Assembly: GCA_965285935.1 (NCBI GenBank)
Contig: OZ260664.1
Coordinates: 50,654,001 to 50,718,000 of the forward strand
Length of the DNA stretch: 64,000 bases
Source of the DNA: Ophelia neglecta
Taxonomy: Eukaryota
Direction: 5' to 3'
Shown here: in pieces, positions 5,736 to 16,713 of the stretch
Position numbering within the stretch: position 1 is the first letter of the stretch
How the letters are laid out: the number at the start of each line of letters is the position of its first letter
The notes under the pieces: generated by a model
Seen by the model: the letters and a program-made list of their open reading frames with translations, nothing else
What the model was told of the DNA's origin: nothing
Databases searched by the model: none
Translations under genes and position numbers: made by a program

Positions 5736-6526
5736 TATATACATTCAATCGTTATTTAAAACAAGTTTTGTGACATAGACTGCCCCACAAGGCATGTCAT
5801 TCAGGCCTAGGTGTTTCGAGACTTTCTGTTCGTTTCTTTAATTGTAGTTTTTTAAATAAAGCTAGTGCAATTTGATATTCTATTGTTTTCAGACATATTT
5901 CCCTTTTGACAATGCTAAATCCATTTTAGTCCGATGAAATTGGAAGAATATGTCCTTCTTTTAACTTTTGAAATTTAATGGAATTAGTAGGCTGGGTATC
6001 TAAATTAATCACTTATAGTCCTGGATGTCCCTATTTCTTTTACAAGAAAAACAAATTCAAAAAAATTGAGTTTTTTTAATTCATTCACACATGATACACA
6101 GTCTCTCGTTGGGTTTCCATATAAACATAAGTTGCTCGGTACTTTGGATGGATTAAAAACACCCTTCGATCTTTAATTTCACTTTTTCACGGTTTACAGG
6201 TGTAAGATAGCGCATCTAAAATGCGATTTCGCTTACAACCCTCATACAAAGGACTTGTTCTGATTTCTACTCTGGGCATTAATATTGGTGATGGACAATT
6301 AATAGTACCCCAGTTAGTTACAATACCGATTTTATTTTTGTGTCGTTCGGCAAGTGTAATTTATTTTTCATACAAAAATTGGCAGGCTGAACCTTCTGTA
6401 TATATAATATAGCATATAATAACTATATAAGGAATTGTTATGATCTATGATCCGAACTACTGAGAAATGTAATTCAACTTAATGTAATCTATCGGTTCTT
6501 TTGGAGGAGATTTTGTCCATTCAGCT

Positions 6527-9090
6527 TTAAGTTAAACTCTGCATCAGTATGCGGATGTGCGACCGGATCTGAATAAAAAGTAGAAATAAACTTATTATGT
6601 TTACTCAAACCGCCGGAAGTCGAGAATCCTCAACTTCCCCACCACTATTTCCTATCAAGCAGAGCTTTTACAACTCGCTTATTTACCCCCATTCCACTGT
6701 TAAATTTATAAATACACTCTATATCCAAAACAGTAAAATATCATTTGAGACCCTCGGGAACCCACTTTGCCTCGCTTGCCCAATAAGAAGAACACTTTAA
6801 AAACGAAAAAAAGAACTAGGTTTACATGGTATATGAAATTCTTGTCATACTACATTTCCTTGTATAAGTATGAGGGAAATTACCGTCCTTAAGAGCGTAG
6901 ATAGCATATGGAAATAAACCTTTTTGTGGAACACATGCTACAAGAAAAACATTATTACTATTAAATAATTTGTCTATAGTCAAGTTAAATCTTACCACGT
7001 TAAAAAACAAACACATGACGGGATCCTCATCTTCACTGCCTGGGCACTCTCGGCGGCCATTACAAATCTGATGATCATCAACGCACAGGTCACGTGCTGG
7101 GGATGTGGGACACAGGAATTTCACATGACCATCCTCGGCGGTTGGACAAACTGAAGAAAATGTATTACTATTATTTGATTACAATACTGTTTTGCGTCAT
7201 TGATTAAGGGAAAAATGTTTCGCTATTGCCTATGAGATACAGATCTCACTCTTTTTTTAGGCATAGGTAATTGTAGGTGTAAAAACCCAAATAAATTAAT
7301 ATATATGTCGTTCCCTTCTCCTTACTACAATTATATTGATTTCAACAAAAAAGTGAAATAATGCTCACACACATATACACAGTACTACCACCAATACCGG
7401 CCGCTTTAATGAGTAGTGCATGAGTGCATGATTGTAACGTTAAAGTATTACAGCGTCAATGTTATGCTTAAACATGCTATTCACTTTTTTTTCGCTTTTG
7501 CATTTGATATAGAATAATGCTGTATTTAAATTTGAAATCTAGGTGTCACCAATTGAGTTGGAAACAACCAATTAGAACTGAACTCAGAATTTCGTAACTG
7601 TCCATGGGGAAAAGAAGTTGTTAACCAAAGCTGAAGTATACTTGGCTCACGGAAGTCGTTTCACTATTCCTACTTTTTTTGAAATAATCACGAATGAAGT
7701 AGATGTTAAGTTTCTTCATATTACTCATTTAACCATTCAGCTATTTTACTTGAATCATGAAATATAAATGTCAAATTAGTTCACAGTTCGCATTTCACTT
7801 TTCCTTTTTAATATTTTAAAAATAAATGGTCTTTTAAATGAAACCAGCCGACGTCAAATGACCCTCAGACCAACCTTCATCTTAGTGTACATCATCTTAG
7901 CGTACGTCTCATCTCAACCAAGGTTCACATCACAGGGTCAAATTCGAAAGACCAAAATTATTACTAGGCTACATAGGAGGGCAAATAAGGGTCCATGAAT
8001 TGAGCCAAGCAGCACACGACTGGGAATATACTTGTCCAGCCGGACACCGCTGACAAGGACAGATAAAGCCTCGTTGAATATCTAAATTGCTGATACTATG
8101 ATTGCTGTGATTTGTTCAGTTCTATTTGGTCTACCAAATGTTTGTGGCTTCTTGAACCATTAAAAATTCGTTTTCCTCATATTTAACTGTTGGTTGTACA
8201 CTCCATAAATATATTTAACCCCCATTTTTAAATGAAAACTTTGGTCTGACGTGATAGAATGATCTGGTTTGACAAACTTTGTTTTCTTCAATACGCATTC
8301 CCTTTTAACTATCTTTATCGAGGTCCTAACTAATGGTCCCTAAAAGGAATATAGTGGGACGTTTATATTCGTTTAACCTTCACTGTATGCACTTTTATAC
8401 TCATAGGCCTACACATTTGGTATCAAACCACAATAACAACTAGGGCCGGCTGGGTTTTTAAGCTTTTTGATTGATTCGAAAGACGATATCTTCAGATCAC
8501 GCGCACTTGAATTTTTCCTAGACAGGGGGAAAACAACATAGTATATGACAACATGGTATGTTATATACCGGTAACAACAAACCTGTTACTCCACTGAATC
8601 AGAGACTCAATACAACATGTACATGCAGAATCATATACTCGACTGAATATTTTAGTGATTGAGGGTACAACTGCTTTAATTCATTTGAAACAACACGAAA
8701 AACATTAACAAACAGACCACCACTACCCCTACCGTAGCCCTCATCTCGGGGAGGAACAGTCTGGCCGCTTTTTTTCTCTTGCGATAAGAAGCCAGAAAGA
8801 CGCGTGCCTTCCGGTTTGTGCGTTTCTGCTTTCAGTTTTGAATTTTCTTTCAAATGCAACTTTCCTCCGATTTCAGGACCTGGCATGTTTAGGAAAACAC
8901 TAGCACTATGTTTCCAGTTTCCAAGTAAGGGTGTCTTCGGTGGTTTATTGTCTTTCCGCTGGTCTTCTTCCTCGAAAGTCGTTATATTAGGTCGGAATTG
9001 GAAGGGTGAGACGCTAATTGCCAGCGTGTCTTGTAAGAGCCACACGCTAGCCATCATAAAGAGGCAAACTTTGTACATTTCTGAATGCAT
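6527..9090 (-). CDS. jeb: Secreted LDL-A domain protein, Jelly belly (Jeb)/HEN-1-like candidate ALK ligand; 3 exons, 184 aa
   Basis: Exons are 9090-8733, 7150-6996 and 6568-6527 (358+155+42=555 nt). Phases match: TAC G|gtaggg...ttttcttcag|TT TGT, then AAC GTG|gtaaga...tttttattcag|ATC. The start is ACC-ATG, followed by a signal peptide (MHSEMYKVCLFMMASVWLLQDTLA). The C-terminus CPTAEDGHVKFLCPTSPARDLCVDDHQICNGRRECPGSEDEDPVMCLFFNVIRSHIRILMQSLT* fits the recalled Jeb pattern CPxxEDG..F.CPT....C(I/V)DDH..C.G...CP.GEDED...C(M/L)F....H(L/I)..L. An alternative same-phase donor would end exon 1 at 8727. Confidence 0.8.
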
Positions 9091-9151
9091 GGTAGATCTT
9101 ACCAAAATCGGTGTGAGTCTATAGTGTGCATCGTCCAGGAGAGTCGGAGAC

Positions 9152-9168
9152 TTTTATAGGTTGACGCA
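9152..9168 (-). promoter_or_regulatory. TATA box and adjacent CRE/ATF half-site of the jeb-like gene
   Basis: The minus strand reads TGCGTCAA-CC-TATAAAAG about 62 bp upstream of the ATG at 9090. Confidence 0.6.
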
Positions 9169-13600: not shown

Positions 13601-15591
13601 GGCACAACAGTAAGTGTGTGTGTGTGTTTGTGGGGGGGGGGGGGGTCACAAATGCAATATGGAATAATAGATTATGTGCCTTATTAATTTAACATCGGTT
13701 CCAATCGTTCGTTCAACACGAGTCATGTTTACTAAAGCACGGAGGAGATATTTACTTTGGATGACTGATTTCCCCATGGCGGCTGGAAATGATATGGGCG
13801 GTCGGCGGTCAGTGAAATTAATCATGCTATGGGGGTTTATGATGAAAGATACTCTCAATATCATGGTATTAATGATGACGGAAAAATCATAACAAAGGAC
13901 GGGAAATGTTCAATTTCAATCTTCAGAACAAGCCAGAATACATACTGGCAGCAGACAGACAAGCCTGTGCTTTTAAGTCTATCGTTGTAAAATGAGTTTA
14001 AAACCGGCATTTTTTGTCTGGAAGCTATAAATAACATAAGGATACATGGACACAGACTATGATATGAGAACTGCCCTTTATTTTTTGTATAAAGGTATAT
14101 AGTCCAACACCCTGATGGAGAGGCCTGGAGAACGGAAAGACACGTAAACATACGAGGTTATGAAGTCTTAAACGCCTAGCAACTTCTATAGGGGATGGCA
14201 GCATCAACTTCAAATGTGTTCCCGTCTCAAAAAGAAAAAGGCTTCAGCTTTTTTATGAGCTGTGGTATATTATTAAGCCCATGGCAAATAGAAATGTTGT
14301 CTACGTCCAGAATTTTTGAAAAAAAGCTACAGGAGGGAGAAGGAAAGCTATGGGACACACAACACCCGAAAGACAATTTTAATGGTTAAATCAACGACGG
14401 CGCGAAATAGTCCAAAGAAAAACAAACTGACAAAAGTCCTTCCTTGATGAATAAAACGTCAAAATAAATATTACATAATACAAAAGGCTACTTACGAATG
14501 AAAAAACTAAATATCCTTGGATGCATTCAAGAACATAAAAACCCCATTATTCACGAATAAACTTGCCAGTGTCAAGGGAAACATTTAGCAAGAGTTATAG
14601 GCGCGGTCGGATGTAAACCACATTTTCCATTATATCCCAGTTGTTGCTTATAACATGCACAAGTATCCAATGTGTCTCTGTGGCATGTGAGAGTTGTATT
14701 TCATGACCAAGAATTAAAGCTTAATGTTTTGGGGTGGAGCGGAAAGGGGGGGGGGTTCTACTCACAAGGGATAGTAAAGGGATACTAAACAAATATTTTA
14801 TCACAGTATATAAAAAATTATCATATACATGTGCGCGTACCCCATACAGAAATAGTACCACGGACACTAATTATTATTGCATACGTATATGCCCATATAT
14901 AATTAGTATATTAATGCAGGTCCTTAATACAGCATACGTATGAGACACGTCACACACGAGTTCATTTGATCTTGTATTACACAGATCTCAGTAGGCATAA
15001 GCTCTTTTTGCATGACGCTTTGAAACGAAGAAAATCCACTGAGAGAACAATTTGGTGACCCCTCCAACCCCCTCCCTACCCACCAGTCTTCCACCACATC
15101 AAACCCTTCTCCCTCCCCCAGTTCACCAGAATTACCAATTATAACTGACTGTCAGAGGAGAATGTATCGGTAGCTGGTGCCTCCCTGTAAATGTTTTATG
15201 TATTTTTCAGACAGCCGCATTATCTTATATGCATATAGAAAACAATACGCTTATTGTCTGCGTCACAGTTAATGTCAAGATTGTTAAATTTTGATAGGGG
15301 ACTCACTTACTTGACGTTATTTATCAACCGTACGTTAAGTTGGACAAAAGTTCCTATACTAACACGACAGCGATCAATATGAATAACATGTTGCCTATAG
15401 GCACAGTACCACAGAAGGGATATTGTTTTCAGTCATAAATATCCGTGTTAAGGATATCTATAGGCAGCTCCCATCGTAGGAGGTGTTAAAAGTTCTCATT
15501 CCACTATTATGTCCTGCGATATGCTTCTTGTCCAGTCTTTCCATTATTAATTGAAAGACATCTGCTATTGGTCTGCAGGCACGGGACCAGA

Positions 15592-16713
15592 ATGAATGAG
15601 ACGGGAACCTCGACCCAGCCACCGGAGTTCACTGGCCGTGATCATGAACATTTCTACTTCGTTTTCGATATAGTTTGCACCGTTCTCCGTTTCATGCTCA
15701 TCGTGCCTATATGTTATGGAAATGCATTAGTTCTAATAACCGTTTGCCAATTTCGCAAACTCCGGACTCCCACAAATGTTTTCATCACCAGCTTGGCCAT
15801 ATCCGACTTGATGATTGGTGTGATAACTATACCAGCCTTCACTCTGGTTCACCATTGTCATTTTGGACTCGAAAAACAAAAGTACGCCTGTCTTGTAAGT
15901 TATGTTTTAAGTCATGGTCCAACATCTGTATCCATGGTGACGCTGTTTTTCATTGCGTGGGAGCGGTACTTTTCCATTCATCAACCATTTTGGTATGAAC
16001 GTAATTTTACGATGAGAATCGCGGCGATCAGCTGTATAGGAATTTGGATTTATGTTTGGACAATAATTCCAGCACTGGCATTTTCTACTGATCAATGGGT
16101 TAACGGCATGGACGATTGCAACTTTTCCAGCGTGCTATCAACTGGGTATATTGGAACGATTTTGGTTCACATGTTGACAATATTAGTAACAACTACAGTG
16201 ATTTATATACTTATCGCTCGCACTGCCTGGAAACACCAAAAAGCTATCGCCAGACAAAGGATGCCCTCACTTGCATCAATAGGAAGTGGAATATCATCTG
16301 GTGTCAACCAGGATTCGAAATTCGTCGAAAACGCTAAAATCTCCAGAATGCTGTCATGTGTACTTGGAATATTCTATTTGTGTTGGGTGCCATATTTGTT
16401 AAGTGTCCCTTTCGCTTTAACGAAAAGCGAGGGGGGCGCAGATCCGATTTGGTTACATGTTTGGGAGCAAATATCCGGAATTGTAGTTTTATGCAACTCC
16501 TTTATGAACCCTCTTGTATACGCTCGCAAAAATGAGGACTTCCGTATCGCCTTTAGGAGAGTGCTGAAAAAAAAGCCTGAAAAAAGCTTGTGGTATGCAA
16601 GTTCAAGGAGTCTGGATACTAATTTAATCGCTATGAACACCCTAGGAAGGTCGATCTCCTATTCAACAAATTCTCTTCAAACGAATCGTGTAACCACAGA
16701 GGTGAAATTATGA
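15592..16713 (+). CDS. Intronless rhodopsin-like (class A) GPCR, 373 aa, orphan, adenosine/amine-receptor-like
   Basis: Seven hydrophobic segments with GN (TM1), LAxSD (TM2), C3.25 and ERY (TM3), W4.50, CWVPY (TM6) and NPLVY plus helix 8 (FRIAFRRVL). N-glycosylation site NET near the start. First ATG at 15592; AATAAA at 16955-16960. Confidence 0.95.
   Translation: MNETGTSTQPPEFTGRDHEHFYFVFDIVCTVLRFMLIVPICYGNALVLITVCQFRKLRTPTNVFITSLAISDLMIGVITIPAFTLVHHCHFGLEKQKYACLVSYVLSHGPTSVSMVTLFFIAWERYFSIHQPFWYERNFTMRIAAISCIGIWIYVWTIIPALAFSTDQWVNGMDDCNFSSVLSTGYIGTILVHMLTILVTTTVIYILIARTAWKHQKAIARQRMPSLASIGSGISSGVNQDSKFVENAKISRMLSCVLGIFYLCWVPYLLSVPFALTKSEGGADPIWLHVWEQISGIVVLCNSFMNPLVYARKNEDFRIAFRRVLKKKPEKSLWYASSRSLDTNLIAMNTLGRSISYSTNSLQTNRVTTEVKL

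What the first reader, a model, noticed from the sequence alone, without database searches (positions are those of the whole stretch)
6527..9090. Compact Jelly belly/HEN-1-like gene: candidate ALK ligand split across three exons
Seen: three exons join in phase into a signal peptide, a low-complexity spacer, a six-cysteine LDL-A module and a short amphipathic tail. The third exon (IRSHIRILMQSLT*) is absent from the ORF track. Established: Drosophila Jeb and C. elegans HEN-1 are secreted single-LDL-A ligands of ALK/SCD-2, while vertebrates use the unrelated ALKAL1/2 proteins. Inference: the EDG..F.CPT, DDH, EDED..C.F and H-hydrophobic tail pattern makes this a Jeb orthologue in what looks like a non-ecdysozoan animal. 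At 184 aa it is much shorter than fly Jeb. This would point to a little-studied Jeb-ALK signalling system in this lineage.
Basis: partly seen in the sequence, partly recalled or inferred. Interest (0 to 1): 0.8.

Follow-up and report, generated by a model that had tools for sequence, protein, structure and literature searches.

The report
Second Jelly-belly-like secreted ligand gene
The small three-exon gene for a secreted Jelly belly/HEN-1-type protein appears real, but a sister gene on the same chromosome matches insect Jelly belly better, and such genes were already known outside insects and nematodes.

Summary
On the minus strand, exons 9090-8733, 7150-6996 and 6568-6527 join in phase through GT/AG sites. 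They give a signal peptide, a spacer, one six-cysteine LDL-A module and a 13-residue tail. Homology supports exon 2, exon 3 and both intron positions.

An unbiased search places exon 2 in the Jeb/HEN-1 family. The best full-domain hit is an Owenia (annelid) protein at 63% identity, and arthropod Jeb matches at about 48%. It does not fit LDLR/LRP repeats, and its cysteine spacing and architecture differ from prohormone-4. The genome also has an ALK orthologue on C1.

The "Jeb orthologue" claim is only partly supported. Searching this genome with wasp Jeb hits a paralogue at C7:29.59 Mb first (85 bits, 58% identity). The window gene comes second (52 bits, 43%). A third, divergent member lies 46 kb away. 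Trees put the window gene in its own subfamily with Owenia, but the deep branching is unresolved.

Jeb-like genes were already reported in Aplysia, octopus, sea urchin and lancelet. I read this as a new member of a known ligand family. ALK binding is inferred, not shown.

The parts
9151..9158 (-). TATAAAAG, a TATA-box-like element 61-68 nt upstream of the ATG
   Evidence: Read directly from the sequence. Its function is inferred.
8733..9090 (-). Exon 1 coding part: start codon, signal peptide, 95-residue low-complexity spacer; ends in phase 1
   Evidence: There is no Pfam hit and no relative by word search. The link to exon 2 rests on a phase that fits the conserved phase-1 intron. An alternative donor at 8727 is possible.
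7151..8732 (-). Intron 1 (GT...AG), phase 1, one codon before the first cysteine
   Evidence: Paralogues B and C have an intron at the same position and phase.
6996..7150 (-). Exon 2: Jeb-type LDL-A module with six cysteines, ending CLFFNV
   Evidence: The AlphaFold model has pLDDT 85.5, and all top PDB fold matches are LDL-A modules.
6569..6995 (-). Intron 2 (GT...AG), phase 0, five codons after the last cysteine
   Evidence: Arthropod Jeb has it at the same position (read-through fragments ending ...MFYKT then VS), and so does paralogue B.
6527..6568 (-). Exon 3 coding part: 13-residue tail IRSHIRILMQSLT plus the TAA stop
   Evidence: It is the top hit of a family tail profile among 1018 downstream peptides. 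It aligns with the Owenia tail and with Jeb TKAHLDVL.
6331..6365 (-). Two AATAAA motifs, 161 and 190 nt past the stop; candidate polyadenylation signals
   Evidence: Their function is inferred.

Best explanation
This is an intact three-exon gene for a small secreted protein of the Jelly belly/HEN-1 family. It has a signal peptide, a disordered spacer and one Jeb-type LDL-A module. The last helix of that module probably runs on into a short C-terminal helix.

It is one of at least three family members on chromosome C7. It belongs to a divergent subfamily (C4-NGRR-E/D-C5 and CLF[YF]xV) shared with the annelid Owenia. The paralogue at C7:29.59 Mb is the closest counterpart of arthropod Jeb.

By analogy with Jeb-Alk and HEN-1-SCD-2, the most likely mechanism is that the secreted protein binds the ectodomain of the single ALK-type receptor kinase encoded on C1, through its LDL-A module, and activates or modulates it. 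The gene model and the family membership are shown here. Secretion, expression and ALK binding are inferred.
For: - Gene model.
- Family placement: 285 hits at E <= 1e-3. Among the 150 best that are listed, every single-domain match spanning residues 1-50 has the pattern CPxxEDG..F.CP...C[IV]DDH.[LI]C....CP..EDE....C[ML]F[YF]. These include Owenia CAH1799656.1 (63% identity), 'uncharacterized protein jeb' of Venturia and a 561-aa Lucilia protein.
- Both intron positions are conserved in arthropod Jeb and in paralogues B and C.
- Tail: first of 1018 candidates with a profile that excludes the window.
- Fold: the model has pLDDT 85.5. All top PDB matches are LDL-A modules, for example VLDLR LA2 at rmsd 1.4 A over 37 residues.
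- The Owenia orthologue models as signal helix, low-confidence spacer, LDL-A, then one continuous helix over residues 115-139 at pLDDT about 89.
- Subfamily: the window gene pairs with Owenia (94/88) inside a 10-member clade (86/75).
- Receptor: a glycine-rich-domain exon scores above the Pfam cut-off and hits only ALK/LTK ectodomains in the PDB. Kinase exons 24-36 kb downstream on the same strand match ALK far better than ROS (55.9 against 36.5 bits, and 47.3 against 33.3).
Against:
- Exon 1 has no detectable homologue, so its link to exon 2 is by phase and signal peptide only.
- The tail match is weak (E = 0.16).
- Pfam Ldl_recept_a scores below its cut-off (18.5 against 24.1 bits). A named arthropod Jeb does the same (20.5 bits), so this looks like a family trait.
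- The module reads N and E where canonical LDL-A and Jeb have two calcium-cage aspartates (C4-NGRRE-C5 against C4-DGxxD-C5).
- No binding test with ALK was possible.
Confidence: 0.7

Rival explanations
1. The window gene is the one-to-one orthologue of Drosophila Jeb.
For: It has all the family motifs. Its tail keeps the basic-small-H-aliphatic start seen in Jeb (RSHI against KAHL). An AU test does not reject a clade of arthropod Jeb plus the window gene's subfamily (lnL 8.3 lower, p = 0.29).
Against: The reciprocal search with the wasp Jeb C-terminus hits paralogue B first (85.1 bits, 58% identity, E = 2.3e-21) and the window gene second (52.4 bits, 43%). B reaches 70% identity to an arthropod Jeb-type module. 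B's clade joins arthropod Jeb in the larger tree (SH-aLRT 81). Holding arthropod Jeb and B's clade together gives the best likelihood found. With three paralogues present, a one-to-one relation cannot hold.
Confidence: 0.12
2. It is a Jeb-family paralogue that has moved away from ALK. It might act on another receptor, as an antagonist, or as a secreted peptide with an unrelated role, as in venom-recruited relatives.
For: It sits in a divergent subfamily with altered calcium-cage positions. A closer Jeb counterpart exists in the same genome. A family member is deposited as a venom polypeptide precursor in the caterpillar Doratifera, so the scaffold has been reused elsewhere.
Against: The acidic EDED cluster, all six cysteines, the CP..EDG motif and the tail are retained. 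No alternative receptor is indicated by any result.
Confidence: 0.15
3. It is a prohormone-4 / IDLSRF-like neuropeptide precursor.
For: Both are small secreted proteins with one LDL-A module. The residues just after the predicted signal cleavage (ISVSPF) loosely recall IDLSRF. That is a low-information resemblance.
Against: Prohormone-4 has a short peptide and a dibasic site directly before the LDL-A, then a long cysteine-free C-terminal domain (PMC8398477). The Aphidius precursor in the supplement of PMC8397052 has cysteine spacing 7/5/6/5/10, no CP..EDG and no C[ML]F[YF] motif, and about 130 residues after the module. The window gene has spacing 11/8/6/5/10, about 95 residues of spacer between the predicted signal-peptide cleavage and the module, and 18 residues after the last cysteine. 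None of the listed hits in the big search showed the prohormone-4 architecture.
Confidence: 0.02
4. The exon-2 module is real, but the model is wrong or the gene is silent. Exon 1 might belong to another transcript, extra exons might exist, or the locus might be a recent unexpressed duplicate.
For: There is no RNA data. Exon 1 has no homologues. A near-equivalent alternative donor exists. The gene is absent from the protein collections searched.
Against: All three exons are open and in phase. A TATA-like box, a good start context, a signal peptide and AATAAA motifs lie where expected. The intron phases match the family. The Owenia orthologue is annotated with the same simple layout.
Confidence: 0.1

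Closest known systems
Drosophila Jelly belly (Jeb) and its arthropod orthologues (e.g. Venturia canescens 'jeb' XP_043280189.1; Lucilia cuprina KNC25227.1)
   Same: Secreted. Has a poorly conserved N-terminal region and one LDL-A module near the C-terminus with the CP..EDG / C[IV]DDH / EDED / C[ML]F[YF] pattern. Has a short helical tail starting basic-small-H-aliphatic. Intron positions around the module are identical.
   Different: Only about 43-48% identity in the module. Reads C4-NGRRE-C5 instead of C4-DGF[IL]D-C5, with two fewer residues in the C2-C3 loop. The tail is 13 residues rather than 19 and lacks the ...LLRWARGR end. The protein is much shorter than fly Jeb (184 against 561 aa). 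A different gene in this genome is the better match.
Owenia fusiformis uncharacterized protein CAH1799656.1 / A0A8J1TB44 (140 aa)
   Same: Nearest named relative: 63% identity over the module, the same CNGRR[DE]CP and CLF[YF]xV motifs, a similar tail and the same overall layout. It is the sister of the window gene in the tree (94/88).
   Different: Shorter spacer (about 45 against about 95 residues), and a tail four residues longer. It is uncharacterised, so it adds no functional information.
C. elegans HEN-1 (ligand of SCD-2/ALK) and nematode relatives (e.g. Steinernema glaseri A0A1I7ZRZ5)
   Same: Small secreted single-LDL-A protein of similar size. The nematode module and tail fall in the same family alignment.
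   Different: The nematode proteins form their own clade. The Steinernema module matches the window gene and paralogue B about equally (48.9 and 50.0 bits). The C. elegans HEN-1 sequence itself was not available to the tools.
Prohormone-4 / IDLSRF-like peptide precursor
   Same: Signal peptide plus one six-cysteine LDL-A module. Known in molluscs and annelids (PMC8398477, PMC6425005).
   Different: Different cysteine spacing, none of the Jeb motifs, the module sits near the N-terminus, and there is a long conserved C-terminal domain.
Vertebrate ALKAL1/2 (Augmentor, FAM150)
   Same: Small secreted ligands of ALK-family receptors.
   Different: Unrelated sequence and fold, with no LDL-A module. 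Reported as vertebrate-only (PMC7851593).

Membership tests
Jeb/HEN-1 family of secreted single-LDL-A proteins | N-terminal signal peptide | tested here: met
   Hydrophobic core with KD mean 2.29 over residues 8-18, a basic residue before it and TLA|IS after it. This is a hydropathy check only; no dedicated predictor was available.
Jeb/HEN-1 family of secreted single-LDL-A proteins | One LDL-A module with Jeb-type spacing (C-11-C-8/10-C-6-C-5-C-10-C) and the CP..EDG, C[IV]DDH, EDE(D), C[ML]F[YF] motifs | tested here: met
   All seven invariant columns of the 47-sequence family alignment are present.
Jeb/HEN-1 family of secreted single-LDL-A proteins | Nearest relatives in an unbiased search are Jeb-type proteins, not LDLR/LRP repeats | tested here: met
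   Every listed single-stretch match over residues 1-50 is Jeb-type. Multi-repeat receptors rank high only through summed partial matches.
Jeb/HEN-1 family of secreted single-LDL-A proteins | Short helical C-terminal tail following the module | tested here: met
   Exon 3 is the top-scoring candidate with a tail profile that excludes the window (8.6 bits, E = 0.16). The model of the Owenia orthologue shows one continuous helix over 115-139. The score is weak.
Jeb/HEN-1 family of secreted single-LDL-A proteins | Family intron positions (phase 1 one codon before the first Cys; phase 0 five codons after the last Cys) | tested here: met
   (paralogue B: both positions). Paralogue C shares the upstream phase-1 position, but its downstream donor is ambiguous.
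Jeb/HEN-1 family of secreted single-LDL-A proteins | LDL-A fold | tested here: met
   Model pLDDT is 85.5. The top 50 Foldseek PDB rows are essentially all LDL-A modules, at rmsd 0.8-1.5 A over 32-38 residues. E-values are weak because the domain is tiny.
One-to-one orthologue of Drosophila Jeb | Reciprocal best hit with arthropod Jeb | tested here: not met
   paralogue B scores 85.1 bits at 58% identity, the window gene 52.4 bits at 43%.
One-to-one orthologue of Drosophila Jeb | Groups with arthropod Jeb in a tree, to the exclusion of paralogues | tested here: inconclusive
   The window gene falls in a separate clade. With 53 columns, the AU tests reject none of the three groupings tried (p = 0.60, 0.29, 0.42).
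ALK ligand (functional class) | Cognate ALK-type receptor present in the genome | tested here: met
   C1, about 95.606-95.642 Mb, minus strand. A GRD exon scores above the Pfam cut-off and hits only ALK/LTK in the PDB. Two kinase exons match ALK best by 14-19 bits over ROS. A second weak GRD candidate has no PDB match.
ALK ligand (functional class) | Binds and activates the ALK ectodomain | not testable with these tools
   The ALK ectodomain is split over many exons that may not be joined here, so no co-fold was attempted. No Jeb or HEN-1 structure exists in the PDB copy.
Expressed, spliced gene | Reads across junctions 8733/7150 and 6996/6568 | not testable with these tools
Prohormone-4 / IDLSRF-like precursor | Short peptide plus dibasic site directly before an LDL-A with spacing 7/5/6/5/10, then a long conserved Cys-free C-terminal domain | tested here: not met
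   Searches compared. The spacing is different, about 95 residues of spacer separate the signal peptide from the module, and only 18 residues follow the last Cys.
LDLR/LRP-type receptor | Tandem LDL-A repeats with EGF/YWTD modules and a membrane anchor | tested here: not met
   There is a single module. The flanking exons encode a signal peptide and spacer, then a 13-residue tail and a stop. Pfam gives only one sub-threshold LDL-A hit.

The most novel reading that the evidence does not exclude
Spiralians may carry a conserved and so far undescribed second Jeb-like ligand subfamily, marked by C4-NGRR-[DE]-C5 and CLF[YF]xV. It would be separate from Jeb proper and largely missed by gene annotation. 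This genome would then pair one ALK receptor with three Jeb-family ligands (A, B and the divergent C, all on one chromosome). That would resemble the way vertebrates pair ALK/LTK with two ALKALs.
Probability: 0.3. Interest if true: 0.45.

Novelty: new member of a known kind. Interest (0 to 1): 0.3.

Why it matters
Jeb-Alk and HEN-1-SCD-2 signalling controls visceral muscle specification, synapse and circuit development, growth and learning in flies and worms. Its ligand side has hardly been studied in other invertebrates. The presence of a Jeb-like gene outside Ecdysozoa is not new: it has been reported in Aplysia, octopus, sea urchin and lancelet. The modest new point is that this genome holds three Jeb-family genes and one detectable ALK. 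The window gene represents a divergent subfamily shared with an annelid that is almost absent from annotated proteomes. Anyone studying ALK signalling in this lineage should test paralogue B first as the Jeb counterpart. This gene should be treated as a possible additional or modulatory ligand.

Tried and rejected
- Word-index protein searches with exon 2 (read on into the intron only to set the length range) and with exon 1 found nothing. A third search with a subfamily alignment added no named clade-A relatives beyond Owenia; its only other species-named hit was a barnacle protein (Amphibalanus) that was not placed.
- The first PF12810 search at the default threshold looked blank. The exon hit appeared once the E-value limit was relaxed.
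- Three look-ups of the contigs that encode unnamed relatives gave no organism names.
- A regex scan for tails downstream of paralogue B and of one relative found nothing useful. The profile search did better.
- The other LDL-A hits in this genome are ordinary multi-repeat receptors and not relatives, for example C7:54.14 Mb.
- The oyster paper's prohormone-4 alignment is held only as an image. I used an insect precursor from another paper's supplement instead, by eye only.
- A MAM-domain search could not be tied to the ALK locus because the family is hugely expanded. One hit lies 116 kb upstream on the same strand, and I did not pursue it.
- The organism could not be identified with the tools.
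- No co-fold with ALK was attempted, because its ectodomain would have to be joined from many exons.
All searches, folds and trees used single exons by reference.
Full report
**What is in the sequence.**
- An ATG at 9090 has A at -3. It lies 61-68 nt downstream of a TATAAAAG (9158-9151).
- It opens a frame that runs to a donor at 8733 (ACG|GTAGGG, phase 1).
- An acceptor (ttcttcag|) precedes 7150. That exon ends at 6996 (GTG|GTAAGA, phase 0).
- A third acceptor (ttattcag|) precedes 6568. Thirteen codons later there is a TAA at 6529-6527.

I translated each exon on its own. They give 119 residues, 51 residues and 13 residues plus the stop. With the split codon G|TT (valine) the product has 184 residues.
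- Exon 1 starts with a basic residue, a 12-residue hydrophobic core (Kyte-Doolittle mean 2.29) and TLA|IS. This looks like a signal peptide. A charged, low-complexity spacer follows.
- Two AATAAA motifs lie 161 and 190 nt past the stop.
- The exon-3 frame has no start codon, which is why it is missing from the ORF list.
- A second phase-1 donor 6 nt downstream (exon end 8727) would add two residues and cannot be excluded.

**Is it more than chance?** Pfam sees only a sub-threshold LDL-A match in exon 2 (18.5 bits against a 24.1 cut-off) and nothing in exon 1. The word-index searches were blank. That justified the exhaustive search.

Exon 2 alone gave 285 proteins at E <= 1e-3 among 1.8 billion. 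A few multi-repeat receptors rank high through summed partial matches. Every listed match that covers residues 1-50 in one stretch is a small or C-terminal single-module protein with the same pattern: CP..EDG, F.CP, C[IV]DDH.[LI]C, CP..EDE and C[ML]F[YF].

Named members include the following:
- 'uncharacterized protein jeb' of the wasp Venturia
- a 561-aa Lucilia protein
- proteins from Artemia, Daphnia, a springtail, krill and a tardigrade
- a nematode protein (Steinernema)
- a caterpillar venom precursor
- the best full-domain hit, an uncharacterised 140-aa protein of the annelid Owenia fusiformis (63% identity)

A control shows that the low Pfam score is a family trait. The Venturia Jeb module, the Owenia protein and this genome's paralogues all score 19.7-23.7 bits, also below the cut-off.

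**Support for the exon structure.** Many database entries are prokaryote-style ORF calls that read through the donor ('...MFYKT' followed by 'VS...'). They place the arthropod intron five codons after the last cysteine in phase 0. The window's exon 2 ends at exactly that point. The upstream intron is phase 1, one codon before the first cysteine. Both paralogues in this genome share it.

For exon 3, I built a 20-column profile from the tails of 24 family members, without the window sequence. I searched it against all 1018 stop-to-stop peptides downstream of the module in four loci. The top hit was the window segment that contains exon 3 (8.6 bits, E = 0.16). This is weak but objective.

The tail aligns with the Owenia tail and with Jeb's TKAHLDVL... 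start. Its hydrophobic moment is high (0.60 against 0.34 for shuffles), although 7% of shuffles reach that value.

**Fold.** An AlphaFold model of exon 2 with a 47-sequence family alignment has mean pLDDT 85.5. A helix starts at residue 43. All the best Foldseek matches in the PDB are LDL-A modules. VLDLR LA2 fits at rmsd 1.4 A over 37 residues, and others include CD320, ApoER2, megalin and TMPRSS2. The E-values are weak, as expected for a 51-residue query.

The Owenia orthologue models as a signal helix, a low-confidence spacer, the module, and one continuous helix from just before the last cysteine to the C-terminus (residues 115-139, pLDDT about 89). In the window gene, the exon 2/3 junction would therefore fall inside this helix. 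The PDB holds no Jeb or HEN-1 structure.

- Searching the whole genome with exon 2 found a paralogue ('B') at C7:29590620-29590778, about 21 Mb away on the same chromosome. It has the same intron positions and a candidate tail exon about 4 kb downstream.
- The reciprocal test with the C-terminus of wasp Jeb hits B first (85.1 bits, 58% identity, E = 2.3e-21). The window gene is second (52.4 bits, 43%).
- The Owenia protein does the reverse: 78 bits for the window gene against 61 for B.
- The nematode protein matches both about equally.
- These searches also exposed a third, very divergent member ('C') at C7:50614818-50614979. It lies 46 kb from the window gene on the same strand and has a plausible signal-peptide exon 6 kb upstream.

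Trees of the module put the window gene with Owenia (94/88) inside a 10-member clade (86/75). B sits in a separate 7-member clade (80/88). In the larger tree that clade joins arthropod Jeb (SH-aLRT 81).

With only 53 columns the deep branching is unresolved. AU tests reject none of the three groupings:
- arthropod Jeb + B clade: best likelihood, p = 0.60
- arthropod Jeb + A clade: lnL 8.3 lower, p = 0.29
- A + B: lnL 3.8 lower, p = 0.42

So the window gene is a genuine family member and at most a co-orthologue. B is the better Jeb counterpart.

**The prohormone-4 rival.** The literature describes prohormone-4 as a signal peptide, one or two short peptides, an LDL-A module and then a long cysteine-free C-terminal peptide (PMC8398477). 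An insect precursor printed in the supplement of PMC8397052 has cysteine spacing 7/5/6/5/10, none of the Jeb motifs and about 130 residues after the module. The window gene has spacing 11/8/6/5/10, about 95 residues of spacer between the signal peptide and the module, and 18 residues after the last cysteine. I reject this reading.

**The receptor.** A six-frame search with the ALK/LTK glycine-rich-domain family found one exon above the Pfam cut-off, at C1:95642152-95642304 on the minus strand (25.9 bits). That exon matches only ALK and LTK ectodomains in the PDB.

On the same strand, 24-36 kb downstream, lie kinase exons with ALK-type motifs. Two of them match human ALK far better than the next kinase, ROS (55.9 against 36.5 bits, and 47.3 against 33.3). 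A second, weak candidate for the glycine-rich domain has no PDB match. The genome therefore has an ALK orthologue, and apparently only one.

**What is already known.** Dornburg et al. (PMC7851593) reported Jeb-like proteins in Aplysia, Strongylocentrotus and lancelets. The same paper found HEN-1 only in nematodes and ALKALs only in vertebrates. jeb is used as a marker of dopaminergic optic-lobe neurons in octopus (PMC9712504). A Jeb-ALK system outside Ecdysozoa is therefore not new.

I found no description of a separate CNGRR-type subfamily, but I did not search for one exhaustively.

**Mechanism and verdict.** The gene model and its Jeb/HEN-1 family membership are well supported. By analogy, the protein is most likely secreted and engages the ALK ectodomain through its LDL-A module, either as an activating or as a modulatory ligand. 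That step is inference only.

The module carries N and E where Jeb and canonical LDL-A modules have two calcium-cage aspartates, and a closer Jeb counterpart exists. A diverged function therefore remains a real possibility.

The organism was not identified. The nearest named relative is an annelid, so a spiralian is likely.

I score this as a new member of a known kind, of modest interest.

Noticed in passing
G000:C7:29590620-29590778 (L002:1498-1656, minus strand): Paralogue B is a Jeb-type LDL-A exon with the same intron positions. It is the best match in this genome to arthropod Jeb (58% identity, 85 bits). A candidate tail exon (VMNSIKVMM...) lies near C7:29586636. No signal-peptide exon was found within 9 kb upstream.
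   Followed up: partly
G000:C7:50614818-50614979 (L031:4818-4979, minus strand), 39 kb before the window start: Paralogue C is a very divergent third family member, 46 kb from the window gene on the same strand. Its closest match is a nematode protein (42% identity). A candidate signal-peptide exon with a phase-1 donor starts at C7:50621205. This suggests a local duplication. Its donor site is ambiguous.
   Followed up: partly
G000:C1 about 95,606,000-95,642,300, minus strand (L009, L012, L018): ALK orthologue: a glycine-rich-domain exon plus kinase exons that match ALK best in the PDB. A MAM-domain exon 116 kb further upstream on the same strand (C1:95758721-95758963) may or may not belong to it.
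   Followed up: partly
window 15568-16713 (+): An intronless 381-aa ORF encodes a rhodopsin-family GPCR (Pfam 7tm_1, 134 bits, E = 7e-39). It lies 6.5 kb from the Jeb-like gene on the other strand.
   Followed up: partly
G000:C9 about 19.56-20.16 Mb and 38.50-38.60 Mb: There are very large tandem clusters of MAM-domain exons. More than 150 matches score above the Pfam cut-off genome-wide, most of them in these two blocks.
   Followed up: no
Protein hits P0017/P0165 (Doratifera vulnerans): A Jeb-type LDL-A-plus-tail protein is deposited as a 'venom polypeptide precursor' of a limacodid caterpillar. This suggests the Jeb scaffold has been recruited into venom.
   Followed up: no
Protein hits P0016, P0026, P0035, P0069, P0101 (Daphnia, springtail, krill and unnamed): Pancrustaceans appear to have a second Jeb-like lineage (CLFY.., tail ..SQ[IV]..) alongside Jeb proper. 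The family may have old paralogues in arthropods too.
   Followed up: no
window 8804-9124 (+): A 106-aa ORF lies antisense to exon 1. It was not searched against any database and is probably a by-product of the coding strand's composition.
   Followed up: no
window 8727 (minus strand): An alternative phase-1 donor (GGG|GTAGTG) lies 6 nt downstream of the proposed one. Using it would insert two residues (GR) before the LDL-A module.
   Followed up: no
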